Position numbers and translations under genes: made by a program
Shown here: one piece after another, positions 34,523-56,314 of the stretch
Position numbering within the stretch: the stretch's first letter is position 1
How the letters are laid out: every line of letters starts with the position of its first letter
IMG/VR virus record: IMGVR_UViG_3300032285_004054
Location: 154,401-218,400 of that record
Strand: one strand, 5' to 3'
Length of the DNA stretch: 64,000 nucleotides
Notes under the pieces: generated by a model
Seen by the model: only the letters and a program-made list of their open reading frames with translations
What the model was told of the DNA's origin: nothing
Databases searched by the model: none

Positions 34523-34576
34523 AGCTAAAATATTTATACTTGATAAGGTACTTTTACAAAAATAAATAAACCGATT

Positions 34577-34765
34577 ATGCCAAATACATCAAACACAATA
34601 ATTGAACTTGTAAATACTTTTGCTGCTGAAGCAGGTAAATTTTACGAGGGTAACAATGCCGCCGGCGCAAGAGCCCGGAAAGCTCTTCAGGAAATAATCA
34701 AGTACGGTCGTGACGAACGCAAGAGAATTCAGGAAGAGAAAAACGCACGTAAAGCTGCAAAGTAA
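34577..34765 (+). CDS. Hc1-like (histone H1-like) nucleoid protein
   Basis: GNNAAGARARKAL pattern, basic C-terminus. Confidence 0.7.
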   Translation: MPNTSNTIIELVNTFAAEAGKFYEGNNAAGARARKALQEIIKYGRDERKRIQEEKNARKAAK

Positions 34766-36219: not shown

Positions 36220-36314
36220 TGGTACTGGGTGTGGGAATCGAACCCACGCTCGGCCCTCATCTAGGGCGCCACGATTATAAGTCGTGCGGTGCTCTCCAAT
36301 TACACTAACCCAGT
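36220..36314 (-). tRNA. Atypical long-arm tRNA with UAU anticodon (reads Ile AUA)
   Basis: Acceptor ACTGGGT/ACCCAGT, loop CTTATAA, ~22-nt variable region with GCCCT/AGGGC stem, T-arm GTGGG-TTCGATT-CCCAC, CCA. Confidence 0.82.
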
Positions 36315-36536: not shown

Positions 36537-36591
36537 ATTTAGAATTATACCTTTTTAAGTTAAAATAGCAAATGAAAAAATAAATATTATT

Positions 36592-36903
36592 ATGAAAGAC
36601 TTTAAGAGATTTAATAGAGAAGAACCTTGGTATACAAAAGTATATGTAAAGTTAATAATATATATTGTTATATCTTGTATTACTTCTCTTATAGCAGATC
36701 TTTCACACTATACATGTCACGATTCAGGGTTTGGAGATATAACCCCTGTGCATTGGATTGTAATAGGTTTAAATTTTATATTACAAGGGGTAATAGCTTG
36801 GAGAGCATTTATTGACGAATCTTCTGCTAAATACAGAGAGTATTTAGAAAATTACGAAGATAAAGAAGAAGAAAAAATTGAGAAAGTAGCAGCTATTAGG
36901 TAA
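36592..36903 (+). CDS. Two-TM late membrane protein (holin candidate)
   Basis: Two hydrophobic helices, charged tail, TAAATA upstream. Confidence 0.45.
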   Translation: MKDFKRFNREEPWYTKVYVKLIIYIVISCITSLIADLSHYTCHDSGFGDITPVHWIVIGLNFILQGVIAWRAFIDESSAKYREYLENYEDKEEEKIEKVAAIR

Positions 36904-38175: not shown

Positions 38176-38541
38176 TTAAGCTACGCTTCCGTCCTCTGGA
38201 CAATTTCCTGTCTCGTGATCTCCGCCACAAGTCGTACAGACCTTAGCGGTTACTTTATCATCTTCGCCGGCTGTACCAGCAACTTCTTCTTTTTCTTTCT
38301 TTGTAAGAAGAGCGTCAAGATCAGCGATGGTCTTACCGTGGTCGTTAACAATCTTAACAATATCTTCTTTTTCGTCCTTAAGCTTTAGATAGTCCTTAGA
38401 ACCGTGCTCAGCTTTAAGTAAGGAACGAACTACTTTGTAGTAACGTCTTGCAAGCTTTTTGTTAACAACTTTATCAGTAGCTGTACCTTCGAGGATGCGC
38501 TGATAAGCTTCCGCTAATAATACTTCATCTTTATTGATCAT
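38176..38541 (-). CDS. Putative internal virion protein with C-terminal Cx2Cx3Hx4C knuckle
   Basis: LLAEAYQRILEG; CTTCGGDHETGNC; TAAATA 6 nt upstream. Confidence 0.6.
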   Translation of the reverse strand: MINKDEVLLAEAYQRILEGTATDKVVNKKLARRYYKVVRSLLKAEHGSKDYLKLKDEKEDIVKIVNDHGKTIADLDALLTKKEKEEVAGTAGEDDKVTAKVCTTCGGDHETGNCPEDGSVA

Positions 38542-38550
38542 ATATTATAT

Positions 38551-38772
38551 TTAATCTTTCCTATGGGACTTCTTCCACCATTTGCACCAGGCACTAGGCT
38601 TAATGTCCCCGCTAACAGCAGAACATTTATTTGGTGATCTCCACATTGTACATTGATCACATCGCTGTCCCTTAACAGTGTGAGCTACATAACCCGCTTC
38701 TGCTTTAGAGTGTTTTGCTTTAGCTTCACTTAACATCTCTAAAGCTAATTTTATAACTTTATCGAAGCTCAT
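38551..38772 (-). CDS. HiPIP-like [4Fe-4S] domain protein with capsid-targeting-like N-terminus
   Basis: AGY...CDQC...C...GDIKPSAWCKWW matches the HiPIP Cys/aromatic pattern. Confidence 0.75.
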   Translation of the reverse strand: MSFDKVIKLALEMLSEAKAKHSKAEAGYVAHTVKGQRCDQCTMWRSPNKCSAVSGDIKPSAWCKWWKKSHRKD

Positions 38773-39204: not shown

Positions 39205-39459
39205 TTAATCTTTATTTACTACGCTGTCAAAACCTGCACTCCAGAGATCAGCAGCTTTTTTATTACCGCCTTTATGAGGATTTTCAGGCATAACACCATC
39301 TCTGAGATATCTTCTTCCAGCTAAAGCGCCATGGGCAAAATGATCAGATGCATCTGAGGCTGCGTGATAATCAGTAGGAGTTCTTGACATAAGTTTTTCG
39401 TATTCTTGTCTACTAATAGTATCGTATGCTTCGTTTAAAGCGGTTTCGAATTTCGACAT
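39205..39459 (-). CDS. Putative internal virion protein
   Basis: MSKFETALNEAY; TAAATA 6 nt upstream. Confidence 0.6.
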   Translation of the reverse strand: MSKFETALNEAYDTISRQEYEKLMSRTPTDYHAASDASDHFAHGALAGRRYLRDGVMPENPHKGGNKKAADLWSAGFDSVVNKD

Positions 39460-39482
39460 ATAATATATTTAAGGTTTAATAT

Positions 39483-39532
39483 AAAAAAAGAGACGGTAGA
39501 TCAAGAGGCGACCAAGCCCTCAACCTACCGTC
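39483..39532 (-). terminator. Long hairpin followed by a U-tract
   Basis: GACGGTAG/CTACCGTC outer stem, inner GAGG/CCTC stem, T7 on the minus strand. Confidence 0.6.
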
Positions 39533-39809: not shown

Positions 39810-40775
39810 TTACGTTATAGCATCAATTAATCCACCGAAATTTTCTTCGGTCTCCGGATCAATTATACCTTTTAGTAAATCAGATTCTATTGGATAAAGA
39901 TCATTATACTCGACTACATATTTTTCACTTTTATCTTTAGCAAAATCAGGCTCAACAAGAGCTTGTCGTACGCGATGTCTTGCCCAAGGACTCATTTCCA
40001 CAGCTGGTTTAATGTATGTAGCAAGTTCACCTTTCCATAAATTATCTCTATCACTTCTTAAACAAACTCTATCTCCCTCTTTAAGGTTGTTTCTCCATGT
40101 TTCTAAATCAAAATCCTTACTCTCTGTAACACTTAGTAAATCACTAAATGAATCTTTAGTATCTTTTGTTAATGACTTTCTTAATTCCCAATCAATAGGA
40201 AATAATTTACTTAGATTGTATCTAGTATAGCCTTGAGAGCCATCTATATTGTGACCTTCTTTAACAAGTAAAGCAATATCTCTAAAACTATCAACTACTT
40301 CTAAATATGTAGCTTTAAATCCACGGACAGTAAAAGGTCTAACTTCTACCTTATCGCCTTTCTTTAAGTTACTTCGCCAAGTTCTAAGATATTCGTAATC
40401 CTCTTGAGTCTCTTCTGATACTATATCGATTAAATCGCTAAATGAATTTTCTGTATCCTTAGATAGAGAGTTCTTTAATTCATATTTTTTTAAAGCTTTT
40501 TGTACTTTATCGGTTACAACCTTTCTAACTGTATAGTAACTATCAGGTACATGTAAGCTTCTATACCATTCATCAAAATCTTTCATATGAACAAACCAAC
40601 CATTACCTGATTTAGCATCTCTAGTCCATATAGCAGGTTTTCCGTCTATAATAATATCCCAACAAGGATTCCACATCTGACCTCCCATTAAGGTTTCAAA
40701 AGGACCCTTAACAATCTCTACTTTAAGATCATTAGCTCTTCTTAATTCCTCTAATATAAGATCATTAAATCTCAC
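39810..40775 (-). CDS. Tail-family member: three-module fusion
   Basis: MRFNDLILEE start; tails KYELKNSLSKDTENSFSDLIDI, DWELRKSLTKDTKDSFSDLLSV, IDPETEENFGGLIDAIT. Confidence 0.85.
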   Translation of the reverse strand: MRFNDLILEELRRANDLKVEIVKGPFETLMGGQMWNPCWDIIIDGKPAIWTRDAKSGNGWFVHMKDFDEWYRSLHVPDSYYTVRKVVTDKVQKALKKYELKNSLSKDTENSFSDLIDIVSEETQEDYEYLRTWRSNLKKGDKVEVRPFTVRGFKATYLEVVDSFRDIALLVKEGHNIDGSQGYTRYNLSKLFPIDWELRKSLTKDTKDSFSDLLSVTESKDFDLETWRNNLKEGDRVCLRSDRDNLWKGELATYIKPAVEMSPWARHRVRQALVEPDFAKDKSEKYVVEYNDLYPIESDLLKGIIDPETEENFGGLIDAIT

Positions 40776-40914
40776 GGTTTATTATTTATCAATATCTGCT
40801 CTAGCGCGGCGAGGTTTCTCCTAATTTCCCCGCTTAGTGCATCCGTCTCGGCCCCAAAGTTTTTGAAAATATTTTATACTCTAAATTGAATTCCGATTAT
40901 TAATTCTAGGGAAA

Positions 40915-41199
40915 TTAAAGAATATCTAATAGATCTCCGAACGTCTCGCCTGTCTCCTTGGACAGATGCCGCTTTATATTATGATCTTCTATAGCTTTGG
41001 CAATAGCGTTCTTTACTCCTTGCTTCTTATAGAGTTCAAGTCCCCAAACAGTGAGGTATTGGTTAGTCTCCAAATATCTAAAACCATCTGGCTCCTCGCC
41101 TATTGTTAACTTCTGGCCATCTACCTCCACGTCATAGCCTATATAGCCTTCGTCCTTAAGGTCGTAAGGACCTCTTAAGAATTTTACTTTATAAGACAT
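40915..41199 (-). CDS. Tail-family member
   Basis: Ends HLSKETGETFGDLLDIL. Confidence 0.85.
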   Translation of the reverse strand: MSYKVKFLRGPYDLKDEGYIGYDVEVDGQKLTIGEEPDGFRYLETNQYLTVWGLELYKKQGVKNAIAKAIEDHNIKRHLSKETGETFGDLLDIL

Positions 41200-41542
41200 C
41201 TAAGAACCCTCCGAATGAATCTCTTGTTTCTGGAGACATAGCTTGAAGTGTCTCCCAATTCTTAATAGCTTTAGCTACCGGACCGTTTTCAGTATCTTTT
41301 CCATCCCAAAGGTAAATCTCTGGCATATAAAGAACATAAGGGTATTCACCACGTTCTGGAGTATAAATGACAAAACTATTTCGATCTTCCGTATCCTCTT
41401 TAATATGCATTAACCAGGCACCTTCTATATCTTCGGGAAGTGTATAGCCTCGCTTTAGATACTCATTGATCTCTTCATCGGTAGCCCTTCTTAGGACTTT
41501 ATAGAAGTTACCAGACTCTAGAAAGAACTTGTTAAAGGACAT
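41189..41542 (-). CDS. Tail-family member
   Basis: MSFNKFFLES ... MSPETRDSFGGFLDVL. Confidence 0.85.
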   Translation of the reverse strand: MSFNKFFLESGNFYKVLRRATDEEINEYLKRGYTLPEDIEGAWLMHIKEDTEDRNSFVIYTPERGEYPYVLYMPEIYLWDGKDTENGPVAKAIKNWETLQAMSPETRDSFGGFLDVL

Positions 41543-41906
41543 CTAATAAACCTCCAAATGAATCTTTAGTTTCTTTGTCTACACTATTTAAAAGATTATA
41601 ATCTTCTATAGCCTTGTCTATTTGTTCTCTAAACGGATCATCATAGACGTCGGTATGATTGGGGATAATCTTAGGATAGGGAGGTAGCCAATGCCCTCTA
41701 TAATGACCTGGTGGCCAGCAGTAATAGCATATGCACTCCTTGTCCTTATACTTCATTTGTAGCTTATAGACATTCTCTTCCCAATCTTTTATATCCAGCT
41801 CATTACGAAAGAGATGGGTCATTGGTCCCTCAAGTATCTTTACTTCAATTCCTCTATTATCACCGTAATTGATAAGAGCTTCTTTTATTAATCGATCAAA
41901 GTACAT
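41532..41906 (-). CDS. Tail-family member
   Basis: MYFDRLIKEA ... VDKETKDSFGGLLDVL. Confidence 0.85.
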   Translation of the reverse strand: MYFDRLIKEALINYGDNRGIEVKILEGPMTHLFRNELDIKDWEENVYKLQMKYKDKECICYYCWPPGHYRGHWLPPYPKIIPNHTDVYDDPFREQIDKAIEDYNLLNSVDKETKDSFGGLLDVL

Positions 41907-42312
41907 CTAATAATCCTCCAAATGAATCTCTTGTATCTTTACTTAATCCTTGCTTAAAATTCCATTGATCTATAAGAGCTGGAACTGTTTCACGTAACAT
42001 CTTATTAAGGAATTGAGCTCTCGGGGCTGACTTGTGTTGTCTACCGACCATACGTTTAAACCAAGTAGGTGTTTGAATAACAGTATAATAAGCTGTTGTC
42101 TTCTGAAGCTCTCTATCTTTATCCTCTATCTTCTTAACCCACCAAGTACCTCCTTTACTATCCTTTAAACAAAAGACCTCTTTATAGTCTTTATGTGGAG
42201 GTTGTTCAAGATGAAGCTCACCAGTAAGACTATCCATAAAGCCGGTACCTACAACCTTAAATGTTGTATTCATCCAGTCCAGTTCTTCTAATACTAATTG
42301 ATTAAAGTACAT
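41896..42312 (-). CDS. Tail-family member
   Basis: MYFNQLVLEE ... LSKDTRDSFGGLLDVL. Confidence 0.85.
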   Translation of the reverse strand: MYFNQLVLEELDWMNTTFKVVGTGFMDSLTGELHLEQPPHKDYKEVFCLKDSKGGTWWVKKIEDKDRELQKTTAYYTVIQTPTWFKRMVGRQHKSAPRAQFLNKMLRETVPALIDQWNFKQGLSKDTRDSFGGLLDVL

Positions 42313-42664
42313 CTAATAATCCTCCGAATGTTTTCTTTGTATCATTACTTAATAGCTTTCTAAACTCCCAATCATTAATAGCATCAGGAACTAACCCGGA
42401 GAACCCCATAAAGGTTACATCTCCGCTATCATGAATGTTGTAGCTAGTATATCCTTCCTTCTCGTTATCTTTAAACCGTACAACAAGACGCGGCCAATAC
42501 CCAGGTCTATTACCATCATCGTCTACCACCCAGGCACCTTTTATATACTCTTCCCTTACCCAGCGATAGCCATAACCGTATATCCTCTGAAGATCTTCTT
42601 CTGTAGCGTCCCGAACGACGTGATACTTCTCTAAAGCTTCTAATACTATTTGATTAAAGTACAT
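42302..42664 (-). CDS. Tail-family member
   Basis: MYFNQIVLEA ... LSNDTKKTFGGLLDVL. Confidence 0.85.
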   Translation of the reverse strand: MYFNQIVLEALEKYHVVRDATEEDLQRIYGYGYRWVREEYIKGAWVVDDDGNRPGYWPRLVVRFKDNEKEGYTSYNIHDSGDVTFMGFSGLVPDAINDWEFRKLLSNDTKKTFGGLLDVL

Positions 42665-42995
42665 CTAATAATCCTCCGAAAGTTTCTCTTGTATCCTTTG
42701 ATAAGGATTGTTTTAATTCCCAATCTTTCATAGCTTTAATAATAAGGCTATCAAGTGTATCAATATCAATACCGAATAGCTTTTTACATTGATCTCGTTC
42801 ATATACAGCATTATCCGGATCAATTCCTGAAGTATTTAAACCATCGAGATAAAGCATACATTGATCATCTTTGACATAACGAAAGAAACACTTCTTACCA
42901 TTTACAGTTATATTATAATGAAGGTCTCCGATAGCCCAATCTGGAAGATCTTTGTCTTCTATAACATTAATAATCTTAATAGAAGGTTGTTTCAT
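42654..42995 (-). CDS. Tail-family member (no N-terminal CTS)
   Basis: Ends DWELKQSLSKDTRETFGGLLDVL. Confidence 0.85.
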   Translation of the reverse strand: MKQPSIKIINVIEDKDLPDWAIGDLHYNITVNGKKCFFRYVKDDQCMLYLDGLNTSGIDPDNAVYERDQCKKLFGIDIDTLDSLIIKAMKDWELKQSLSKDTRETFGGLLDVL

Positions 42996-43003
42996 ATAGG
43001 CTA

Positions 43004-43540
43004 TTAGAGGGCGTCTAGGAAGTCCTTAAATGATCCTTGAGTCTTAGTATCGGTTTGTCCTAGAGCTAAGAAGTTCTTTTCTTTATGTTTTATCCACCAG
43101 TTTACTAGCTTATCTAGCTTCTCGGCAAATGCGTAATGATAACCTTTCTGCCTCCATACTGGATCCTCTGTATTATTATCATAATGAACGAAGTAACTTA
43201 TATATGGATATAAAACATTCGGTACCCAAGAGGCAGCTGCAGCAATATGGGTAGGTCCTGTTTCATCTTCAAGTCTTCTAGTATCATCAATACAAGTCAT
43301 ATAATATGTCTTTGTATCTGTCCATGTAGCAAGCTCCCTAGTCTTATGTAATATACCATTAGGTTCAGCCTCCTTCGGTAGTCCTTCTTTAATGTCATAT
43401 ATCTCAAAGTTATGAAAGGGCATTGAATCAACCTCATCCGTTGACCAGACCGATCGTTCAAAGCCTTGCTTTCTATCGGGGTTTCTTGATCGAGGTACAT
43501 TAGCTACTAGAGCCTCTTTGAAGTAATCTTTAAATGACAT
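43004..43540 (-). CDS. Tail-family member
   Basis: MSFKDYFKEA ... TDTKTQGSFKDFLDAL. Confidence 0.8.
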   Translation of the reverse strand: MSFKDYFKEALVANVPRSRNPDRKQGFERSVWSTDEVDSMPFHNFEIYDIKEGLPKEAEPNGILHKTRELATWTDTKTYYMTCIDDTRRLEDETGPTHIAAAASWVPNVLYPYISYFVHYDNNTEDPVWRQKGYHYAFAEKLDKLVNWWIKHKEKNFLALGQTDTKTQGSFKDFLDAL

Positions 43541-43877
43541 CGATTAAACCTCCAAATGATTGTTCAGTATCCTTTGATAGATTGTTTTTTAATTCCCAAG
43601 ATATAAGCTGTTTGTATATAGGAAAGTCCGGATAGATATACCCTTCAAAGCCATAATTAGGTAAGCTATACACCATTAAGTTTTCATTGTTAAGATCTTC
43701 AAATAAGTCCTTACAACGTATGACTAGAACATCAGATACATCGGTATAGTTTCTAATTACCCATCCTCTAGTTAATTTTAAATCCTCATCATATTGAGAA
43801 GATAAACCATCGAGTATTTTCTGAGGAGCTAATTCTATCTTCTCCTTCTTTGATTCGTAGAATAACTTAAATGACAT
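43530..43877 (-). CDS. Tail-family member
   Basis: MSFKLFYES ... LSKDTEQSFGGLIDVI. Confidence 0.85.
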   Translation of the reverse strand: MSFKLFYESKKEKIELAPQKILDGLSSQYDEDLKLTRGWVIRNYTDVSDVLVIRCKDLFEDLNNENLMVYSLPNYGFEGYIYPDFPIYKQLISWELKNNLSKDTEQSFGGLIDVI

Positions 43878-44265
43878 CTAGTAGCCCTCCGAAAGTATCT
43901 CTTGTCTTATCTGGTAGATGCCTCCTTTGTTCAAAGTCATCTATAGCCTTAACTACTCTCCTACCTTCTTCTCTATAGGCTGGTATATCCCGCTCGGTAA
44001 AGGCACCACATCTATCCATACCTTCTAAAGTATAAACATCATAACCTTTTACATACGTAATAGATCTTATAGCAATATATCTAGCAATATATCTATCAGT
44101 TCCTGATTCCTTCTTTATAGTAAGAAGATAGAGAGGGTCATCTTTTCTCCAAGGATACTTCCTACGAAAGACCCCCTCATACCCCTCAGGCACTGCTTCT
44201 ACAGTTATATTATCTCTTTGAAGCTTATAAGGCTCTTTAGATTCGTAGAATAACTTAAATGACAT
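43867..44265 (-). CDS. Tail-family member
   Basis: MSFKLFYES ... LPDKTRDTFGGLLDVI. Confidence 0.85.
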   Translation of the reverse strand: MSFKLFYESKEPYKLQRDNITVEAVPEGYEGVFRRKYPWRKDDPLYLLTIKKESGTDRYIARYIAIRSITYVKGYDVYTLEGMDRCGAFTERDIPAYREEGRRVVKAIDDFEQRRHLPDKTRDTFGGLLDVI

Positions 44266-44608
44266 CTAATAGACCTCCAAATGAATCTTTAGTATCGTCT
44301 GATAGATTATTTTTAAACTCCCATTTCTTAATAGCTTTAGCAAGAGGTGAGTTTATATCCTCATGACTAATAAGGTCAATAGTGTTAGGGTCTAATGTGT
44401 AAATTGAATATGTCTTCCAGTCAGGAATATATGCTACAATAACCTGTCCTTCATCATAGTCATCGTTCATATAAACGATCCATGCCTGTTCAATATCTCC
44501 CTTCTCCGTATCAAGATCTCTTGTAAGATCTTTAAGTTCTTTCTTTGTAAATCTTCTAAGAACTTTGTATGAGTCGTTTGACTCTGTAAAAAATTGTTTA
44601 AATGACAT
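44255..44608 (-). CDS. Tail-family member (first in the array)
   Basis: MSFKQFFTES ... LSDDTKDSFGGLLDVI. Confidence 0.85.
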   Translation of the reverse strand: MSFKQFFTESNDSYKVLRRFTKKELKDLTRDLDTEKGDIEQAWIVYMNDDYDEGQVIVAYIPDWKTYSIYTLDPNTIDLISHEDINSPLAKAIKKWEFKNNLSDDTKDSFGGLLDVI

Positions 44609-44628: not shown

Positions 44629-44823
44629 TTATTTAAGAGTCTTTATTTCATTCCCTATCTCTACTATATACTCACCTATCTTAGACATGCCGAGCTCCTT
44701 GGTTAGGCTCTGCTTCTCCCTTAGTATTCTAACGATAGTCTCTAGCTTACCTAGATAGTCTTCTAATGTAAGCCCGGATAGATCTTCCTTTAGATAGCCT
44801 GATACAATTTCATTAAACTTCAT
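44629..44823 (-). CDS. Small late protein with CTS-like N-terminus
   Basis: MKFNEIVSGYLKED; TAAATA 7 nt upstream. Confidence 0.6.
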   Translation of the reverse strand: MKFNEIVSGYLKEDLSGLTLEDYLGKLETIVRILREKQSLTKELGMSKIGEYIVEIGNEIKTLK

Positions 44824-44859
44824 AGTCTATTATTTAGTCTATGAACAGGTTTAATAGTA

Positions 44860-45467: not shown

Positions 45468-45656
45468 TTACTTTTCTTTATCTTGCTTTACAGTTACTAC
45501 TAAGTTAACCGGCTGGCTATTCTCTTTATCAAATACTATACCACCATGGGTATGATTAAGTCCTGCTACAATTGCTCCTGTTATATCAAAGAATGTATAA
45601 GCTATACAGAAGTAAATTAGGAAGTTCTTTAGCGTTAATTCTCTTAGAAAGTTCAT
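45468..45656 (-). CDS. Small membrane protein
   Basis: One TM helix; TAAATA 7 nt upstream. Confidence 0.5.
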   Translation of the reverse strand: MNFLRELTLKNFLIYFCIAYTFFDITGAIVAGLNHTHGGIVFDKENSQPVNLVVTVKQDKEK

Positions 45657-45854
45657 ATAGAACTATTTAAGGTATTTGAAAGGATTTTATTCCGGATTTT
45701 GTTCCTTCCTCATCGATAGTCAGGCATGGAGCCTCTTCTACCGACCAGCTCGTGCTTAATCAATACATCAGGATCAAAGCTTACCATAGGTCTTTGGCTC
45801 CCCTGAACTAGATAGAGTCTATAAGCATCACCAACGAGCAATTCGACTCTACCT

Positions 45855-46025
45855 CCCTCTAGGATTATACCTACAACTAGAGGGTATTAATTTGTTTGAC
45901 CGGGGTGGTTAATCCATCCTGATGCACCGGTTGATAAAGGCCTTTTAGAGCAACCTAGTCACGCGCACGTACGGTAGCTCTTTCGATCGAGCCTGCGAAC
46001 GGTCAAAATGTTTTAAAGGCCTAAG
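45855..46025. ncRNA. Candidate structured non-coding RNA
   Basis: GC-rich and ORF-free; TTTGACCG/CGGTCAAA closing helix plus internal stems. Confidence 0.4.
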
Positions 46026-46043
46026 CCATCATAGTCCTCCATA

Positions 46044-46247
46044 TTAATATCGTCCATGTCTCTTATCATAGGTAGCAAAAGGATCAGAGTCTACAATGGT
46101 TACCAGGACCCAGGCCGCTATACAATTCCAAAAGGTATAATGAATATTGGTATGGAATAGATAATTGATTGCCCAGATACCGAGCCAGATGTCTAGAACT
46201 CGATAGATGATATAGTAGATGCCTCGTACTAGTTCGTTCCGTTCCAT
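46044..46247 (-). CDS. Small membrane protein
   Basis: Likely start MERNELVRG; two hydrophobic segments. Confidence 0.5.
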   Translation of the reverse strand: MERNELVRGIYYIIYRVLDIWLGIWAINYLFHTNIHYTFWNCIAAWVLVTIVDSDPFATYDKRHGRY

Positions 46248-46412
46248 ATTACTTCCTCTTCTTACCTGCGTCCGATCGTTGGGCACGATAGGCTCCTACC
46301 TTAGATCCCTTTGGTACTCCGGCCGATAGTTGAGTACGAAGATACTTGGCCGTATTATAACGAACCAATGATCCACCTTTACAGATTTTGTTCTTTGTTG
46401 TTGCCATACAGA

Positions 46413-46610
46413 TTAGATATTATAGGCGTTATCGATAACGGCAAGGTAATAACCATCTAGATCTACCTCCCACCTATCTACCTTTGTATTCTTTACTAGG
46501 TTATGAACCTTATACCTATCATCATTAGAGTAGATATTGACAATGACCTCCTTGTCTAGCTCCTCCTCTGGTACCTCTGAGAGCTTATTCTTTAGATCCC
46601 TATAGGTCAT
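46413..46610 (-). CDS. Hypothetical early protein
   Basis: MTYRDLKNKL, similar to 48012-48203 (MTYKQLLNEL). Confidence 0.6.
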   Translation of the reverse strand: MTYRDLKNKLSEVPEEELDKEVIVNIYSNDDRYKVHNLVKNTKVDRWEVDLDGYYLAVIDNAYNI

Positions 46611-46814
46611 TTAATTAGTAAAGTAGGTAGGGTTGGCTCGGAAGGCTGGAGTAGGTTTAGTAAGCTGGGAATGCTTTACTGAATCCTTTCCGAGATAATA
46701 GACACCAATGATGGCGTAGAGGACAATGTTACAGGTAACATAAGTTATACAGAATAGCTTATAGGTATCCCAGATAGCTTCCTTGAGACGATTAGAGGTT
46801 ATAGTAGAGCTCAT
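46611..46814 (-). CDS. Small membrane protein
   Basis: One TM helix. Confidence 0.5.
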   Translation of the reverse strand: MSSTITSNRLKEAIWDTYKLFCITYVTCNIVLYAIIGVYYLGKDSVKHSQLTKPTPAFRANPTYFTN

Positions 46815-46986
46815 ACTTGTAGTTATTAATGTTGTTGTTGTTTGACATACGCCTCAGCCATCCATCCTGGGTAGTTGATTGTATGTGGTTTAGAAGAAGA
46901 GAAGGCTTCCTCTCTACGGAGTACCCGAAGATATTAAAGAAAGCTTCTAGAGGGTTCTTAATGAATGTCTTGATCTTATTCTTCAT
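46792..46986 (-). CDS. Hypothetical early protein
   Basis: MKNKIK start 6 nt after the -10 of TTGCCG-17-CATAAT. Confidence 0.6.
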   Translation of the reverse strand: MKNKIKTFIKNPLEAFFNIFGYSVERKPSLLLNHIQSTTQDGWLRRMSNNNNINNYKYELYYNL

Positions 46987-47026
46987 ACGAGTATTATGAA
47001 TGCTTTGGTTGGAACCGGCAACTACT

Positions 47027-47155
47027 TTATCGATCAAACGATTTAAATGATTGGCGGTTATAGTTCTTCTTATTCTTAAAGGCCTTCTGACCCGGGGCCC
47101 AATGCCGCCGGGTCTTAATCTCCTTTAGAGAGATGGTAAATGCTTTCGTCTTCAT
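47027..47155 (-). CDS. 42-aa basic peptide
   Basis: MKTKAFTISLKEIKTRRHWAPGQKAFKNKKNYNRQSFKSFDR; own promoter TTGCAG-17-TACTAT. Confidence 0.6.
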   Translation of the reverse strand: MKTKAFTISLKEIKTRRHWAPGQKAFKNKKNYNRQSFKSFDR

Positions 47156-47196
47156 ACTACTAATAGTAGAAGCTTATAGAGGCACCTGCAAGTATC

Positions 47197-47361
47197 TTAT
47201 AGAGCCTCTACCGCTCTCTTCATACTATCTATCTCCATGACGACGTCGGAGTAGGCTACTACTAGCTCTTGGATCTGCATATCCTTCTGATAGATTTGAT
47301 CCTTGAGGACGGCTATGAGCTTCTCCATCTCTTCGATCTTGTTTTGTAGGTCTGTTGTCAT
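47197..47361 (-). CDS. Small coiled-coil protein
   Basis: MTTDLQNKIEEMEKLIAVLKDQ... (54 aa); ATGA overlap with the upstream gene. Confidence 0.6.
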   Translation of the reverse strand: MTTDLQNKIEEMEKLIAVLKDQIYQKDMQIQELVVAYSDVVMEIDSMKRAVEAL

Positions 47362-47648
47362 TTTGTTGTAGGTGGTTCTTGGCCGGGATTACCATCCGTC
47401 CTCCAGGTACTATAGATGCCTTCATTGAGGGCGTCGATATTGGCGTAGTTGTGGATCAGATCGTAGTCATGCTTGAACTGTAGCGTACCCCAAACCAGAA
47501 CCAGAGCTACCCAGAGGGCTAGGATCAATGGCCAGATACGAAGGTAGAGCCTATCTACAAACCTTCTTAGACGCCTCAGTTGTACTTCGATCTCAACTGA
47601 GATAGGATACCAATATGTCCATTTGAGCTGTTGGGTCTTGGAGAACAT
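47358..47648 (-). CDS. Membrane protein
   Basis: TM segment IWPLILALWVALVLVWG. Confidence 0.55.
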   Translation of the reverse strand: MFSKTQQLKWTYWYPISVEIEVQLRRLRRFVDRLYLRIWPLILALWVALVLVWGTLQFKHDYDLIHNYANIDALNEGIYSTWRTDGNPGQEPPTTK

Positions 47649-47809
47649 AATCCTTTTAATTCATCATTGTGTTCTGGGTAATGCATACCCTATAAAGCTT
47701 CTCCATGGCGGCCAGGTACTCCTCATCGACTCCCATGAGCCTGGCCGCCATTTGTCGCATGCTATTCATCTCTTCTTCAGAGATGGAGTCTAAAGCGTTC
47801 TCCATTATC

Positions 47810-48007
47810 TTATTCGGTTACAATCTCGTAGGTAAGGGACTGGATAGCAAACCCATAGGCGTCGGCGATGGCGTCGGCCAGATCCTCTTCGAGGTTGCAG
47901 CTATCAGGGAACTCAAACTCCAGATCGACTGGAAGGTCACAAAGGTCCTCTTCATTATCGACGACCCAATAGATGTCGGTTACTTTGATCTTGTTCAGTA
48001 GTTCCAT
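47810..48007 (-). CDS. Acidic hypothetical early protein
   Basis: 65 aa, tightly packed. Confidence 0.6.
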   Translation of the reverse strand: MELLNKIKVTDIYWVVDNEEDLCDLPVDLEFEFPDSCNLEEDLADAIADAYGFAIQSLTYEIVTE

Positions 48008-48011
48008 AGTC

Positions 48012-48203
48012 TTAGATTCCGTAGGAGGTTAATACGAGGTAGAAATGATCGGGGTCGAGAACGTCATTGGCGTCATCGGTAGATACTTCGGCGTGATTGA
48101 TTGAGCAGAAGTCATCACGATCAGGATCATAGACGGTGACTGTGTCTTCAAGACGCTCTTTAGGAAGCTTCTTAAGCTCGTTGAGGAGTTGTTTGTAGGT
48201 CAT
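48012..48203 (-). CDS. Hypothetical early protein
   Basis: 63 aa. Confidence 0.6.
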   Translation of the reverse strand: MTYKQLLNELKKLPKERLEDTVTVYDPDRDDFCSINHAEVSTDDANDVLDPDHFYLVLTSYGI

Positions 48204-48208
48204 AAGGG

Positions 48209-48457
48209 TTAGGCGGTTACTTGTTTGTTCTTTAGTTGTTCGATCTCGGCTTTAGAGCTGCTATACCCATCATTGATAGCCTCCTGAAGGGTACGTCCGT
48301 AGTTGAAGTATCCGCTGCGATCCATCTCCAGGTATGTTTGAATGGATCCGAGGGTGAAGGCGTATCTGTATTCCTTATTACCTCTGAGTGTCTCAAGCTC
48401 CAGAATCAGATCTACGAGCTCCTTGACGGTTCTATCTACTGTGTTCTTATTTTTCAT
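48209..48457 (-). CDS. Hypothetical early protein
   Basis: MKNK start; promoter TTGTAG-17-TATACT-6-ATG. Confidence 0.65.
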   Translation of the reverse strand: MKNKNTVDRTVKELVDLILELETLRGNKEYRYAFTLGSIQTYLEMDRSGYFNYGRTLQEAINDGYSSSKAEIEQLKNKQVTA

Positions 48458-48473
48458 ACGATCAGTATAAGGG

Positions 48474-48674
48474 CTAGAGGTCGGAACTACAAGCTTCTTC
48501 TGCTGGCAACCCTAGAACAATCTCGTTATACTTGCTATGGAATACCTCCTGGATCTGATCTACTAGATTGAACATAATATAGGCCTTATCATTAGCCCCG
48601 CTACTATATTCATTCTCAAGATCTTTGAGGTAGTCGGAGATGAATGCGATGAATTCTTCGTTCTTATCTTTCAT
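48474..48674 (-). CDS. Hypothetical early protein
   Basis: TTGAGG-17-CATAAT-6-ATG. Confidence 0.65.
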   Translation of the reverse strand: MKDKNEEFIAFISDYLKDLENEYSSGANDKAYIMFNLVDQIQEVFHSKYNEIVLGLPAEEACSSDL

Positions 48675-48705
48675 ATAATGATTATGATCGGGTTGGAAGG
48701 AAACC

Positions 48706-48903
48706 TCAAGCCAAGAATTTGCCGAATGTCTCCATGCTCAGGTAGTATCGCCTCTGAACGGCCTCAGGCACCCTCCAGAAGTCAGAATCAGGTCCATCGC
48801 ACTTATCATACTCTTTCATCGCTTTCTTGGCTTCATTCATAGCTTCGAAGAAGTCTCGAGCCTTTAAGACGGCTTCCATGTCGTACTTGATCTTATTTTT
48901 CAT
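48706..48903 (-). CDS. Hypothetical early protein
   Basis: TTGACC-17-TATACT-6-ATG. Confidence 0.65.
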   Translation of the reverse strand: MKNKIKYDMEAVLKARDFFEAMNEAKKAMKEYDKCDGPDSDFWRVPEAVQRRYYLSMETFGKFLA

Positions 48904-48921
48904 ACGATCAGTATATAGGGT

Positions 48922-49113
48922 TCAGTCCTGAAGGTCAATGATAGAATCTGTAATTCCTTCCATACGTTCCTGTTGGGAATCCTCGACAGCTCCATAGAAG
49001 TACTCCTCATAATGGGCTTCTACTTCGGCTTTGGTAATATCAATGCCTTGATCCTTTAAAGCATCAATAACGTCTTGAATTTCAGAGTCAGCGATTTCAA
49101 TCTCAATCTTCAT
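48922..49113 (-). CDS. Acidic hypothetical early protein
   Basis: 63 aa. Confidence 0.6.
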   Translation of the reverse strand: MKIEIEIADSEIQDVIDALKDQGIDITKAEVEAHYEEYFYGAVEDSQQERMEGITDSIIDLQD

Positions 49114-49117
49114 ATGT

Positions 49118-49267
49118 TTATTCAGCGGTTAGGAATTTGATGTTGATATAACGGCGTAGACCTCTTGGTTTATTCTTCTCTGACATCATCGCCAGTCCTC
49201 CGACGATTGAACGAATGATCCAGATCTTACCCTGGTCCTCTATGTGCATTCCTTTTCTTATTTTCAT
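49118..49267 (-). CDS. Small basic early protein
   Basis: MKIRKGMHIEDQGKIWIIRS (49 aa); TTGCAG-17-TATACT-6-ATG. Confidence 0.6.
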   Translation of the reverse strand: MKIRKGMHIEDQGKIWIIRSIVGGLAMMSEKNKPRGLRRYINIKFLTAE

Positions 49268-49367
49268 ACATTCAGTATAAGGGAATTGAAAAGGAACTGC
49301 AAGCCTGGAAGAGTTGAAAAATAAGAAACGTCTCTATCCAGGCCTGCAGCAACCCTTCCCAAAAGTC

Positions 49368-49745
49368 TCAGTACCTAGGCACCACGATGGTGGGCTGTGG
49401 GGCGGTAAAATACGCTGGGGAATAATAAGCAGGGTTAGCATACGTCGGTACGTATCCTCCACATCCATAGGCTGGTACCGGGACGGGGGCAGCATATGCT
49501 GGGGCGGCCAGAGCTCCGGCGACGCCTAAACCGAAGAGCGTCCAACCTAGGCCATTAGGGATGCCAGTTCCACACCAGCCACCTCCTCCCCCATAGCCAC
49601 ATCCCCCGCGGTAGTATCCTCCATTACCGCAACCCCCGCCCCATCCTCCACCACCGCGATAGCATCCCCCATTGCCGTTATAATAGGCTTGGGATGTACT
49701 AACGAGAGCTGTAATAAGGAGTAGGGATAGAATGATCTTTTTCAT
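49368..49745 (-). CDS. Exported Gly/Cys/Tyr-rich protein
   Basis: Signal peptide MKKIILSLLLITALVSTSQA, GGC repeats, hydrophobic helix, Pro/Tyr tail. Confidence 0.65.
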   Translation of the reverse strand: MKKIILSLLLITALVSTSQAYYNGNGGCYRGGGGWGGGCGNGGYYRGGCGYGGGGGWCGTGIPNGLGWTLFGLGVAGALAAPAYAAPVPVPAYGCGGYVPTYANPAYYSPAYFTAPQPTIVVPRY

Positions 49746-49746
49746 A

Positions 49747-49938
49747 TTATTGATTGTAGTTAGAATTGGCTGATTGTGCAAGCTCCTCATAGTGTTCAAT
49801 TACAAAGAGGTATTCATCTTTGGTTAGACCGGCGACGATTCGGGCCTGGGGATCGAGCATATTGTATCGACCGCCAGCTCGGACCTTCTCATAGGCGAGC
49901 CAGTCGTTGATTTGATCTTTGGTAAAGTCCATTGTCAT
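49747..49938 (-). CDS. Hypothetical early protein
   Basis: Likely start MTMDFTKD. Confidence 0.55.
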   Translation of the reverse strand: MTMDFTKDQINDWLAYEKVRAGGRYNMLDPQARIVAGLTKDEYLFVIEHYEELAQSANSNYNQ

Positions 49939-49942
49939 AGTC

Positions 49943-50170
49943 TTAGGCAATGCGTAACATAATGGTACCTTCTTCATCGAGGATCGAGCGCCATTCAAAG
50001 CCCTCGGCCTTCAACTTAGCAATCATCCGGCCGGCTGGTGGGTGGCTATTGTTCAGACGGAAGATCGTTCCGATTGCTGACGAACGCCAGGGATAGGTGG
50101 TCGTATTAAAAGGACGACCTGGCTTACGCTTACCTCGAACATTGATGGACTTGATTTTATTGTGCTTCAT
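49943..50170 (-). CDS. Basic protein (AT-hook-like RKPGRP)
   Basis: 75 aa. Confidence 0.55.
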   Translation of the reverse strand: MKHNKIKSINVRGKRKPGRPFNTTTYPWRSSAIGTIFRLNNSHPPAGRMIAKLKAEGFEWRSILDEEGTIMLRIA

Positions 50171-50238
50171 TGTATTGGATTGTATTTGGGTTTAAAAAGT
50201 GGGAGACCCCAGGGCTCGCTGGGATCTCCCTATGATTC

Positions 50239-50571
50239 TTACTTAGCCTTCCCCTCAACCGGCATAGGAGCCTTAGCCTTAGGAGCGGCCTTCTTCTTAG
50301 CCGTCTGGATCTCCTCCTTCAGAGCCTCGACAACGGTCTCTACCGTCTTCTGAGCAGTCTTCTTAACAGCGCCCTTCCCGGTAAAGGTACGCAGGAGGTT
50401 CTCCAAGGAGCCGTACTTCTCGATCTTCTTCTTGAGGTTGGATCCGAAGCAGGTGAACGCGTTACCGGTTACCGTGCACTCGATGTAGTTCGTCGGAAGA
50501 ACTCCGAACTGGTCGAAGTAACCGAGCTGATAGGCGATGACGTCGTCGTTGATGATGTTGTTGTTTTTCAT
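50239..50571 (-). CDS. Basic protein with CxxTG motif and histone-like tail
   Basis: Start MKNNNII after an A/C-rich leader; weakly similar to the N-terminal domain of 29629-30240. Confidence 0.6.
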   Translation of the reverse strand: MKNNNIINDDVIAYQLGYFDQFGVLPTNYIECTVTGNAFTCFGSNLKKKIEKYGSLENLLRTFTGKGAVKKTAQKTVETVVEALKEEIQTAKKKAAPKAKAPMPVEGKAK

Positions 50572-50651
50572 TGTTGGGTTTGTTTTTGGGTTTTGGTTGT
50601 TACTGCTGTACTGATTGTACTTCTTCATTGTGGCTCCGATCCTTCGGAACC

Positions 50652-50861
50652 TCAAGCTTTTTCATCCAGGAATTCCTGAACCTGTTCTTCCAGGATAGGA
50701 TCCTGAATAGGATTCCCGTCTGTATCCCGGATCTCAAAATCAATGATCTTTCCCTTGGCGTTGGAATACTCATTGACAACGATGGATCCGTAGCGTGGGA
50801 CCTCATCGATAAAATAGGTGTCGAGAATAGTCTCGGTGTGTTCGTGGGTTGTAATTGTCAT
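50652..50861 (-). CDS. Acidic hypothetical early protein
   Basis: TTGAGG-17-CATAAT-6-ATG. Confidence 0.65.
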   Translation of the reverse strand: MTITTHEHTETILDTYFIDEVPRYGSIVVNEYSNAKGKIIDFEIRDTDGNPIQDPILEEQVQEFLDEKA

Positions 50862-50898
50862 ACGAGCATTATGGATGGATTGGAAGGAAACCTCAAGC

Positions 50899-51174
50899 TT
50901 AAACCAATCCTACAAGAGCCTTAAAGGTCTGATCGGATGGACGCTCGGTAGCAAACCAGGTATGGGTAGTATAATTGCCAATATCTACACCGAGATCTTG
51001 AAGGTCTTCACCAATAATAACATCCATAAGCTTCCATCCTTTAACGGCCTGATCTTTAAAAGCCTCTCGGATGATTACTTGCTTGTAAGGATTAATCTGA
51101 TACATCTCATAATCATCAATGAAAAGGATGTATTTAGCTGTCGATGAGTTTAGGGCGATGTTCTTATTTTTCAT
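50899..51174 (-). CDS. Hypothetical early protein
   Basis: TTGAGT-17-CATACT-6-ATG. Confidence 0.65.
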   Translation of the reverse strand: MKNKNIALNSSTAKYILFIDDYEMYQINPYKQVIIREAFKDQAVKGWKLMDVIIGEDLQDLGVDIGNYTTHTWFATERPSDQTFKALVGLV

Positions 51175-52982: not shown

Positions 52983-53288
52983 TTAAATGATACCCAAGAG
53001 ACCTTCAAATGAGTCTTTTGTTTCCGGTGATAGATTCTTCATTATATTATATCTCTCTATCGCCTTTAATCCTTCTTCTTCTATATCTTTGAATATATTA
53101 ACCGATGTTGCCAGCCCCAGTAATGGCTTATATTTTGTTGGTACCTTTAAGAACGCTAGATATGATCTCTTTTTACCTTTTTCTAAAACAAATTGCCAGG
53201 TATTACCTTCATTATCTTTCATCTCATACCCTGGTTCCCTTCTCTTTCCTACTATCTTATACTCTACATCTGTAAATGTTAATGACAT
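52983..53288 (-). CDS. Tail-family member
   Basis: Ends RYNIMKNLSPETKDSFEGLLGII. Confidence 0.8.
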   Translation of the reverse strand: MSLTFTDVEYKIVGKRREPGYEMKDNEGNTWQFVLEKGKKRSYLAFLKVPTKYKPLLGLATSVNIFKDIEEEGLKAIERYNIMKNLSPETKDSFEGLLGII

Positions 53289-55336: not shown

Positions 55337-55612
55337 TCACAGAATTCCCACAAAATCCTGGAAATTCTCCTGTGTTTTCTCTGATAATTCCTTAATAATA
55401 CTATAGTTTTTCGGGAACATTTTACAGATTTCCGCTACTTGATCCCTGTCTGTTGAACCATCCTGGTAACGAACATCTATCTTACACATTAAACTACTAG
55501 GGAATATAGTTTGCATTTCCGTTACTTGTACGGTCATAATTCTTCCGTCATAGTAATAATCAAACCAGTCCCCAGGCTTGAGATTACTAACAAATGATAG
55601 GTTATCGAACAT
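55337..55612 (-). CDS. Tail-family member under an early-type promoter
   Basis: Ends LSEKTQENFQDFVGIL; TTGAAC-17-TAGTAT-6-ATG. Confidence 0.7.
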   Translation of the reverse strand: MFDNLSFVSNLKPGDWFDYYYDGRIMTVQVTEMQTIFPSSLMCKIDVRYQDGSTDRDQVAEICKMFPKNYSIIKELSEKTQENFQDFVGIL

Positions 55613-55667: not shown

Positions 55668-55991
55668 ATGAACTTCGAGGATCTTGTTGTAGAGGCTATA
55701 CATAACAAATATGTTAAGTTTGATATAGAGATTCTTAGTGGTCCTTACCCTGGTGAACATTACGGGTGGTTGGAAGAGTGTCAAGTATACAAAGCAAGAA
55801 TTTTTGATAATACAAACGTTCAATTAATCTATCAACCGAGTAGGGATTATGTTGGTGCGAAGAATTTTGACGTCTGGTGGTTTGGTCGGGAGGCTGGATT
55901 TGACGAACAGGCCAAAGCAGCTATAATAAAATACAATATGTCAAAGGAAGCTAAGGGATCATTTGGTGACTTCTTAGACGCCATATCATGA
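55668..55991 (+). CDS. Tail-family member
   Basis: MNFEDLVVEA ... MSKEAKGSFGDFLDAIS. Confidence 0.8.
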   Translation: MNFEDLVVEAIHNKYVKFDIEILSGPYPGEHYGWLEECQVYKARIFDNTNVQLIYQPSRDYVGAKNFDVWWFGREAGFDEQAKAAIIKYNMSKEAKGSFGDFLDAIS

Positions 55992-56314
55992 GCTTAAACG
56001 TAGAAATAATTCCCAGAAGAACGTACGATACAAGTTACGGATTCAAGCGTTACAGTTGTAAGATATCCGGATCTGTAGACGGAATTGATATCAATAATGC
56101 ACTACCTTGGCAGAAAGGTGTCTTCCAAGTAGAAATATGGCATAATGGCTCCTGTCGACTACCTGCTTTAGATCAAGTTCCAGAGATTCCCTACCCTAAA
56201 ACCTATCACAAGTTTTGTGCTGAAGTTAAGAAAGCTATTGAAGACCAGGAGCTAATATCCTCACTATCGCCGGAAACAGGCGATGCTTTCAAAGACCTTA
56301 TTAGTATAACTTAG
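55988..56314 (+). CDS. Tail-family member
   Basis: Ends LSPETGDAFKDLISIT. Confidence 0.78.
   Translation: MSLNVEIIPRRTYDTSYGFKRYSCKISGSVDGIDINNALPWQKGVFQVEIWHNGSCRLPALDQVPEIPYPKTYHKFCAEVKKAIEDQELISSLSPETGDAFKDLISIT

What the first reader, a model, noticed from the sequence alone, without database searches (positions are those of the whole stretch)
39810..44608. Tandem array of hypervariable, probably virion-injected proteins sharing a conserved C-terminal tail
Seen: 11 consecutive minus-strand ORFs (94-321 aa) end in [WY]ExxxxLSx[DE]Txx[ST]FGGLLDV[LI]*. Nine begin MxF-x5/6-E (MSFKQFFTES, MYFNQLVLEE, MSFKDYFKEA). The cores are barely alignable but fall into two loose subfamilies (YKV.R.T.EE...GAW; VK/EI..GP...Y). 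TAAATA late promoters lie upstream. Established: T4 internal proteins IPII/IPIII carry the capsid-targeting sequence MKTYQEFIAE, removed by gp21 after Glu; injected IPI* blocks the modification-dependent nuclease GmrSD, and the IPI locus varies among T-even phages. Inference: this is an expanded, diversifying arsenal of injected effectors, plausibly anti-defence proteins shielding 7-deazaguanine/glycosylated DNA. The tail would be a shared docking, packaging or ejection helix. I recognise no described family with this constant-head/variable-core/constant-tail design.
Basis: partly seen in the sequence, partly recalled or inferred. Interest (0 to 1): 0.93.

Follow-up and report, generated by a model that had tools for sequence, protein, structure and literature searches.

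The report
Phage protein arrays sharing one tail
An uncultured T4-like phage carries at least 23 probably late-expressed genes for small, fast-changing proteins that all end in the same ~30-residue tail and often begin with a peptide resembling T4's capsid-targeting sequence. They are probably accessory proteins sent to one common destination, perhaps the virion, but nothing here shows packaging or injection.

Summary
All 11 minus-strand ORFs (39810-44608) carry the C-terminal module, and the 321-aa ORF is three fused units. The window holds six more members (52983-56314). The same 218-kb genome holds five more, plus a 662-aa leucine-rich-repeat protein with both head and tail.

An exhaustive profile search found only 37 matches among 1.84 billion representatives. 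There is no Pfam, PHROG, PDB, cultured-phage or literature hit.

Neighbouring genes overlap by exactly 11 nt. The tail's Phe-Gly-Gly codons are the GGAGG ribosome-binding site and its Asp-Val codons hold the next ATG, which fixes the next protein's first four residues. Synonymous variation, internal tails and non-overlapping members show that head and tail are still selected as peptides.

Perfect repeats of 29-31 nt flank single cassettes, and related phages carry almost non-overlapping repertoires at different sites.

NTAAATA precedes tail-fibre genes and every family unit but no replication gene, so late expression is likely. The head resembles T4's capsid-targeting sequence and this phage's putative scaffold N-terminus. 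Against T4-type internal proteins, most members are acidic and about half lack the head.

Packaging, injection and anti-defence remain untested.

The parts
44255..44608 (-). ORF1, 117 aa; head MSFKQFFTES, core type A, canonical tail; second cistron of the operon, with its own AAGGAG ribosome-binding site
   Evidence: AlphaFold model
43867..44265 (-). ORF2, 132 aa; a cassette flanked by 29-nt perfect direct repeats; absent between the ORF1 and ORF3 orthologues in relative L001
43530..43877 (-). ORF3, 115 aa; 77% identical orthologue in L001
43004..43540 (-). ORF4, 178 aa; degenerate tail SFKDFLDAL with no GGAGG and no embedded ATG, because the next gene does not overlap it
42654..42995 (-). ORF5, 113 aa; no head (MKQPSIK), core type B, canonical tail
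42302..42664 (-). ORF6, 120 aa; core type A; flanked by 31-nt perfect direct repeats
41896..42312 (-). ORF7, 138 aa; head MYFNQLVLEE
41532..41906 (-). ORF8, 124 aa; core type B
41189..41542 (-). ORF9, 117 aa; core type A; 65% identical orthologue in relative L008/L009 that lacks the head
40915..41199 (-). ORF10, 94 aa; core type B, no head; tail TFGDLLDIL (ribosome-binding site and ATG lost, no overlapping downstream gene)
   Evidence: AlphaFold model
39810..40775 (-). ORF11, 321 aa, GTG start; three fused units with internal tails ending near 40419 and 40128; units 2 and 3 have a WRxNLKxGDxV core (third core type)
44629..44823 (-). 64-aa first cistron of the operon; head-like N-terminus (MKFNEIV), no tail
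44831..44837 (-). CTAAATA, late-promoter-like box 7 nt before the ATG at 44823; similar boxes at 44630-44636 and 40783-40789
39492..39532 (-). Hairpin followed by a U-run downstream of ORF11: probable intrinsic terminator of the array
   Evidence: -26.7 kcal/mol, z -4.9
52983..53288 (-). Second-cluster member, 101 aa
53433..53786 (-). Second-cluster member, 117 aa
53812..54222 (+). Second-cluster member, 136 aa; head MSFSQLVLET without any upstream overlap; TTAAATA 6 nt before the ATG
55337..55612 (-). Second-cluster member, 91 aa
55668..55991 (+). Second-cluster member, 107 aa; head MNFEDLVVEA; ATAAATA 6 nt before the ATG
55988..56314 (+). Second-cluster member, 108 aa; 4-nt overlap with the previous gene, no head

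Best explanation
This is a lineage-specific multigene family of a far-T4-like phage. The genome carries at least 23 genes and 25 tail units.

Each protein is modular:
- An optional ~10-residue N-terminal head (M-x-F-[KN]-x-h-h-x-E).
- A small core of at least three unrelated types, or in one case a 600-residue leucine-rich-repeat body.
- A constant ~30-residue C-terminal module: a helix (KAIxxWE) followed by a capped amphipathic helix (LSxDTxxSFGxLhDhh).

Shown:
- The genes form translationally coupled arrays. The tail codons also encode the GGAGG ribosome-binding site and the ATG of the next gene.
- The conserved junctions carry 29-31-nt perfect repeats around single cassettes.
- Repertoires differ almost completely between related phages.

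Inferred:
- Recombination at the junctions adds and removes cassettes.
- The family is transcribed late from gp55-type NTAAATA promoters.
- The head is this lineage's equivalent of the T4 capsid-targeting sequence, sending head-bearing members into the prohead core for delivery with the DNA.
- The tail, predicted with low confidence despite strong conservation, is a second docking helix that binds one common partner, still unidentified.
- The variable cores are host-interaction modules, most plausibly counter-defence.
For: Family and tail.

Dual coding:
- Eight 11-nt overlaps in the window.
- 17 of 20 such junctions across loci carry GGAG in the F-G-x codons, against 11 of 27 other tails that have FG at all (p=0.003).

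Peptide-level selection:
- Synonymous variation occurs in the tail and in the head.
- Internal tails lack any ribosome-binding site.
- Heads occur on non-overlapping genes.
- Head and tail are both kept on leucine-rich-repeat orthologues that are only 32-37% identical.
- Head and tail co-occur: 11 of 24 family members versus 7 of 305 other ORFs (p=6e-10).

Unrelated cores and flexible ends:
- Both AlphaFold models give the most C-terminal ~15 tail residues pLDDT ~45-55; the head of ORF1 scores 43. The models have different core topologies.
- Profile comparison of the cores aligns only the heads.

Turnover.

Late promoter:
- TAAATA lies within 45 nt upstream of five of eight tail or fibre-region genes, the MoxR and VWA genes, the leucine-rich-repeat gene and all family units. 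It precedes none of six replication genes.
- The motif is enriched just before ATG: 18 observed versus 8.5 expected.
- A gp55-like sigma factor is present.

Likeness to the capsid-targeting sequence:
- Alignment with the T4 ipI/II/III N-termini.
- The putative scaffold, which lies between the protease and the major capsid protein, starts MNFKEIL.
- This parallels T4, where the gp22 N-terminus (..QLIAEA) resembles the IPII/III targeting sequence (..EFIAEA).
- T4 ip genes also flank the tRNA cluster on the early-direction strand.
- Literature on the targeting sequence, on diverse internal proteins, and on Alt being processed at both ends: PMC3012670, PMC9026906.
Against: - There are no virion, processing or expression data.
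- 18 of 22 members are acidic, whereas T4 IPs are basic.
- About half of the members lack the head, and presence tracks the junction type: 15 of 20 with 11-nt overlaps versus 2 of 13 with 4-nt overlaps. An orthologue pair differs in having it.
- A head profile built from the family ranks the scaffold only 14th of 305.
- On T4 the same profile ranks a UvsW.1-like ORF and gp61.1 above ipI (6th of 930), and ipII/III fall outside the top 25. Such N-termini are therefore not diagnostic of head proteins.
- No protein in the 20.9-kb locus that contains the head genes carries the tail.
- NTAAATA also precedes many small genes of unknown role.
Confidence: 0.42

Rival explanations
1. The proteins are late cytoplasmic accessory proteins that are never packaged. 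The tail docks all of them on one hub, phage or host, and the head is simply an N-terminal helix. One candidate hub is the MoxR AAA+/VWA pair encoded next to the leucine-rich-repeat member. VWA MIDAS sites bind acidic residues, and the tail carries a conserved Asp in a hydrophobic context.
For: - Most members are acidic.
- Half lack the head.
- The tail is the only universal feature.
- The head/tail leucine-rich-repeat gene sits next to a ~155-aa gene plus MoxR plus VWA/DUF2201 in three lineages, even though its orientation flips. Short family arrays are adjacent in two of them.
- No head-module protein carries the tail.
Against: - The adjacency may be inherited synteny.
- Some tails lack the Asp (..LINTIL..LLGIL).
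- This reading does not explain the head's likeness to the T4 targeting sequence and to the scaffold N-terminus.
Confidence: 0.22
2. The proteins form one structural family whose C-terminal helices serve folding or oligomerisation rather than addressing. On this view the tail is just the slowest-evolving part of rapidly diverging paralogues.
For: - Both models are a beta-meander followed by C-terminal helices, and the KAIxxWE helix is confidently packed (pLDDT ~85).
- All small members are of similar size.
Against: - The cores are not detectably homologous.
- A third core type and a 662-aa leucine-rich-repeat protein carry the same tail.
- The distal tail has low confidence in both models.
- The tail also works as an internal linker-like repeat in ORF11, P0024 and P0034.
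Confidence: 0.13
3. The conservation of head and tail comes mainly from nucleotide-level constraints: ribosome-binding site, start codon, translational coupling and recombination homology. There is no shared protein function.
For: - The 11-nt overlaps, with GGAGG and ATG inside the tail codons.
- These signals are lost where no gene follows (ORF4, ORF10).
- The first four head residues are forced by the overlap.
- Perfect 29-31-nt junction repeats flank single cassettes.
Against: - Synonymous sites vary while the residues stay the same.
- Tails are kept with 4-nt overlaps that lack a ribosome-binding site (SFDDLINTIL), at internal positions and on terminal genes.
- The conserved part extends about 25 residues upstream of the ribosome-binding site.
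- Heads occur on genes with no upstream overlap.
Confidence: 0.1
4. The tail is a sliding-clamp interaction motif, like the C-termini of T4 gp43, gp33 and gp55. It would tether the proteins to the phage clamp on DNA.
For: - The T4 motifs read from the record are ..SLDFLFG, ..TLDFLL and ..SLDFLYEAND.
- This phage's polymerase ends ..TDLFDLLS.
- The family tail is ..[ST]F[GDE][GD]L[LI].. at or near the C-terminus.
Against: - The hydrophobic spacing differs: F-x-x-L-L in the family, L-x-F-L-F in T4 and F-x-L-L in this phage's own polymerase.
- The position that is Phe in T4 is Gly or Asp here.
- The gp55-like protein here has no such tail.
- No clamp gene was examined.
Confidence: 0.07

Closest known systems
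T4 internal proteins IPI/IPII/IPIII and their capsid-targeting sequence (CTS)
   Same: - Small proteins with divergent bodies and a ~10-residue N-terminal peptide carrying aromatic and hydrophobic residues and a hydrophobic-x-Glu site (PMC9026906).
- The genes lie on the early-direction strand beside tRNA clusters.
- The T-even IP repertoire is described as highly diverse, with only the CTS conserved (PMC3012670).
   Different: - No sequence homology (hhalign probability 0.2% to ipI).
- Members here are acidic, not basic.
- At least 23 genes rather than 3.
- The head is optional.
- A constant C-terminal module is the defining feature, and T4 IPs have no counterpart to it.
T4 Alt (packaged ADP-ribosyltransferase processed at both termini)
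   Same: A large protein (682 aa in T4, 662 aa for the leucine-rich-repeat member here) with short signal-like peptides at both ends (PMC9026906).
   Different: No homology. The body here is a leucine-rich-repeat binder, not an enzyme. Cleavage of either end is unknown.
Paralogous ejection and inner-body protein families of giant phages (phiKZ, 201phi2-1, SPN3US)
   Same: Multiple paralogous head-internal proteins with N-terminal propeptides cleaved after Glu. Whether a protein is processed varies between relatives (PMC5694885).
   Different: Those propeptides are mostly longer than 100 residues. No shared C-terminal module is described for them, and there is no homology.
Scaffold or cargo C-terminal capsid-docking peptides (P22 scaffolding helix-turn-helix, encapsulin cargo-loading peptides); recalled from my own knowledge, not tested here
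   Same: A short C-terminal helical or Gly-containing hydrophobic peptide on variable cargo addresses it to the interior of an HK97-fold shell.
   Different: No sequence match was tested or found. The partner of the tail here is unknown.
Translationally coupled overlapping genes and the plastic regions of T4-like genomes
   Same: Dense small ORFs with overlapping stop and start codons, and gain or loss by recombination between short repeats.
   Different: Here the overlap is a fixed 11 nt, and the ribosome-binding site and start codon are built into a conserved protein motif. One sequence therefore serves as peptide signal, translation signal and recombination homology.

Membership tests
T4-type internal (injected) head proteins | N-terminal 10-19-residue capsid-targeting sequence ending at a prohead-protease site (hydrophobic-x-Glu) | tested here: inconclusive
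   Nine of the 11 array members and the leucine-rich-repeat member fit the pattern and align with the T4 ipI/II/III N-termini. About half of the family lacks it. A profile of the family heads is not specific for head proteins in T4.
T4-type internal (injected) head proteins | Sequence or fold homology of the mature part to IPI, IPII or IPIII | tested here: not met
   hhalign of family alignment A7 against T4 ipI gives probability 0.2%. There are no Pfam or PHROG hits and no Foldseek hit with E<0.09.
T4-type internal (injected) head proteins | Basic proteins packed with the DNA | tested here: not met
   18 of 22 members have pI 4.5-5.7. T4 ipI/II/III have pI 8.9-9.5.
T4-type internal (injected) head proteins | Late transcription | tested here: inconclusive
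   NTAAATA lies upstream of every family unit and of the tail and fibre genes, but of none of six replication genes. This rests on the motif alone; there are no expression data.
T4-type internal (injected) head proteins | Presence in the virion, cleavage by the prohead protease, ejection into the host | not testable with these tools
   The phage is uncultured and no proteome exists. A prohead protease homologue is present in the genome.
T4 sliding-clamp-binding proteins (gp43/gp33/gp55 type) | C-terminal [ST]-L-D-F-L-[FLY] motif | tested here: not met
   The likeness is loose. The Phe position is Gly or Asp in the family, and the spacing differs from this phage's own polymerase tail.
Any curated protein family (Pfam-A, PHROGs, PDB sequences) | Significant profile match | tested here: not met
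   The best Pfam E-value was 0.037, below the curated cut-off.
Translationally coupled overlapping cistrons | Start codon and ribosome-binding site of the downstream gene lie inside the upstream coding sequence | tested here: met
   Eight junctions in the window overlap by 11 nt, with GGAGG 8 nt before the ATG. Across loci, 17 of 20 such junctions carry GGAG.

The most novel reading that the evidence does not exclude
This would be a two-label cargo-addressing system of a T4-like phage. An N-terminal capsid-targeting peptide that copies the scaffold's own N-terminus, together with a C-terminal docking helix, loads a rotating repertoire of 20 or more unrelated cargo domains into the capsid for injection; one cargo is a leucine-rich-repeat binder. 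New cargo would be plugged in by recombination at junctions that serve at once as peptide signal, ribosome-binding site and start codon.
Probability: 0.25. Interest if true: 0.85.

Novelty: new variant of a known kind. Interest (0 to 1): 0.62.

Why it matters
If the head and tail are addressing signals, this family would show how a phage keeps a large, quickly exchangeable set of delivered or co-localised host-interaction proteins. It would also give portable peptide tags for loading cargo.

The triple use of one short sequence is a clear, testable example of overlapping constraints that could drive cassette evolution. That sequence acts as protein motif, ribosome-binding site plus start codon, and recombination homology.

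The family is also a pool of more than 50 uncharacterised small domains that are natural candidates for counter-defence screens.

Tried and rejected
- Homology searches all came back empty for the small members:
  - Pfam and PHROGs.
  - blastn and tblastn against 50,697 phage records with four queries.
  - PDB sequences with the tail profile.
  - Full-text search for the tail peptides.
- Foldseek of both AlphaFold models against PDB and BFVD found nothing below E 0.09.
- A single common fold for the cores is not supported; profile comparison aligns only the heads.
- The word-indexed protein search found few members. The exhaustive profile search was more useful.
- The sigma-70 promoter scan found fewer sites than in shuffled sequence. 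The terminator scan missed the real hairpin because its loop is long, and folding recovered it.
- The spacer between ORF10 and ORF11 is not unusually structured (z 0.5). Rfam finds only tRNAs.
- I walked about 110 kb along the genome to reach the head genes. No tail-bearing protein lies in the 20.9-kb locus that contains them.
- The head profile proved not to be diagnostic in T4.
- dN/dS was not attempted. Orthologues are 25-35% diverged at the protein level, most members have no orthologue, and synonymous sites would be saturated.
- The sample identifiers gave no literature, so the host is unknown.

Full report
**What the window is.** The window is the last 64 kb of a 218,400-bp IMG/VR contig. 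It belongs to a phage only distantly related to cultured T4-like phages. Its DNA polymerase is at best 34% identical to any of them.
- The window encodes UvsX, gp46/47, a helicase, a primase, a gp55-like late sigma factor, 7-deazaguanine genes, several glycosyltransferases and 11 tRNAs.
- The structural genes lie elsewhere on the opposite strand.

**The observation.** Eleven consecutive minus-strand ORFs at 39810-44608 all end in the described module.
- A profile of the last 40 residues scores each unit at E 1e-12 to 1e-20 within the session's loci.
- In an exhaustive search of 1.84e9 representative proteins it finds only 37 matches at E<=1e-3. Nearly all are 90-150 residues long with the match at the C-terminus.
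- Nothing matches in Pfam, PHROGs, PDB sequences, 50,697 phage records or the literature.

The family is larger than reported:
- The 321-aa ORF is three units fused in frame.
- Six more members lie at 52983-56314 on both strands.
- Five more lie near the start of the same contig (L004).
- A 662-aa leucine-rich-repeat protein of the same genome carries both head and tail.
- Five phage lineages carry the family (L001, L008/9, L015, L016 and this one).

**A second coding layer.** Eight junctions in the array overlap by exactly 11 nt.
- The Phe-Gly-Gly codons read TTTGGAGGN, which contains the GGAGG ribosome-binding site.
- The Asp-Val codons read GATGTN, which holds the ATG of the next gene. The stop codon lies inside that gene's codons 3-4, so M-[SY]-F-[KND] is forced.
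- Where no gene overlaps (ORF4, ORF10) both signals are lost.
- Across all loci, 17 of 20 junctions with 11-nt overlaps carry GGAG. Relatives that use 4-nt overlaps have tails such as SFDDLINTIL with no ribosome-binding site (p=0.003).

This does not explain the conservation away:
- Synonymous sites vary in both tail and head.
- Internal tails and terminal tails are conserved without any downstream gene.
- The conserved region reaches about 25 residues upstream of the ribosome-binding site.
- Heads occur on genes with no upstream overlap. These include leucine-rich-repeat orthologues only 32-37% identical that keep both MSFKQF..E and the tail.
- Head and tail co-occur far more often than chance: 11 of 24 family members versus 7 of 305 other ORFs.

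**Architecture.** The two AlphaFold models have mean pLDDT 74 and 71.
- Both give the most C-terminal ~15 tail residues only ~45-55 despite their conservation.
- The cores differ in topology and are not detectably homologous.
- A third core type (WRxNLKxGDxV) and a leucine-rich-repeat body carry the same tail.
- Conserved yet unplaced termini on unrelated bodies fit docking peptides better than fold elements.

**Dynamics.**
- ORF2 and ORF6 are each flanked by perfect 29-nt and 31-nt junction repeats.
- Relative L001 has the ORF1 and ORF3 orthologues adjacent, without ORF2.
- A collinear relative (L008/L009) has its 12-gene array where the window has its second cluster. At the site of the main array it has no array.
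- Non-family orthologues between these two phages are a median 61% identical. Only one of 22 family members has a full-length orthologue at 65%, and most match through the tail alone.

**Timing.** TAAATA followed 5-8 nt later by ATG is enriched: 18 observed versus 8.5 expected, and none of 100 shuffles reached 18.
- TAAATA lies within 45 nt upstream of five of eight tail or fibre-region genes, the MoxR and VWA genes, the leucine-rich-repeat gene and every family transcription unit.
- It precedes none of six replication genes.
- With a gp55 homologue present, this is most simply the late promoter.
- A strong hairpin with a U-run ends the array.

**Is the head a capsid-targeting sequence?** In favour:
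- Read from the T4 record, ipII/III start MKTYQEFIAEA and ipI starts MKTFKEF. Family heads such as MSFKQFFTES and MSFKEYIEEAV align with these with one gap.
- I reached the head genes of this genome and confirmed the protease and the major capsid protein. The acidic coiled-coil protein between them sits where T4 has its scaffold and starts MNFKEIL.
- In T4 the gp22 N-terminus (..QLIAEA) likewise resembles the IPII/III targeting sequence.
- T4 ip genes also sit on the early-direction strand beside the tRNA cluster.

Against:
- The scaffold ranks only 14th of 305 with a family-head profile.
- On T4 the same profile puts a UvsW.1-like ORF and gp61.1 above ipI, and misses ipII/III.
- Half of the family lacks the head, and presence tracks the junction type: 15 of 20 versus 2 of 13.
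- Members are acidic, whereas T4 IPs are basic.

**Verdict.** The structure, extent, dual coding, modularity, rarity and turnover of the family are shown. Late expression is a well-supported inference. Prohead targeting by the head is plausible, at roughly even odds for the head-bearing members. The partner and role of the tail are unknown, and injection and anti-defence are untested. I file this as a new variant of the T4 theme of diverse accessory proteins with a shared addressing peptide. It is not a member of the IP families.

Noticed in passing
window 17920-17934, 19777-19791, 25387-25401, 30240-30254, 34563-34579, 36581-36594, 38539-38553, 39457-39471, 45654-45669 and others: Many genes start 5-8 nt after NTAAATA, which leaves no room for a ribosome-binding site, whereas internal cistrons use GGAGG. 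If the box is the late promoter, first cistrons would be leaderless or nearly so. Replication genes instead have TATACTAT-like boxes 8-12 nt before the start.
   Followed up: partly
L014 13546-15534 (same genome, contig about 38-40 kb); L015 10001-11842; L016 5558-6784: A 400-660-aa leucine-rich-repeat protein with family head and tail always sits next to a ~155-aa gene, a MoxR-type AAA+ ATPase and a VWA/DUF2201 protein. This holds in three lineages even though the gene's orientation flips.
   Followed up: partly
window 17932-18198; 38551-38772; 28014-28487; L026 6855-7160: Small non-family proteins combine a head-like N-terminus with a very basic C-terminus (for example ..KKHSRRRKHKRK). By charge they look closer to T4-style internal proteins than the acidic tail family does.
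   Followed up: no
window 46000-52000: This is a higher-GC island (0.43-0.46 versus about 0.35) packed with 60-140-aa ORFs. Several begin MKNKN or MKDKN, which may mark another paralogous set.
   Followed up: no
T4 record NC_000866: 114210-114440 and 18966-19130: The family-head profile scores two T4 proteins highest: a 76-aa UvsW.1-like ORF (MLLEFKQFLYEA) and gp61.1 (MKTFKEFIKE). I do not know either as a head protein. Their N-termini resemble the T4 capsid-targeting sequence.
   Followed up: no
window 2141-3070, 23214-24754, 7816-9069, 11516-13741; L013 16402-17097: The genome carries 7-deazaguanine pathway genes (GTP cyclohydrolase, QueD, QueE, QueC) and several glycosyltransferases, which suggests hypermodified DNA.
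   Followed up: no
window 36220-36314: ARAGORN calls a 95-nt tRNA-Ile with anticodon TAT, which is unusually long for a tRNA.
   Followed up: no
L008/L009 3864-5090: The relative carries an IS605 OrfB/Cas12f-like (TnpB) gene a few kb from its family array.
   Followed up: no
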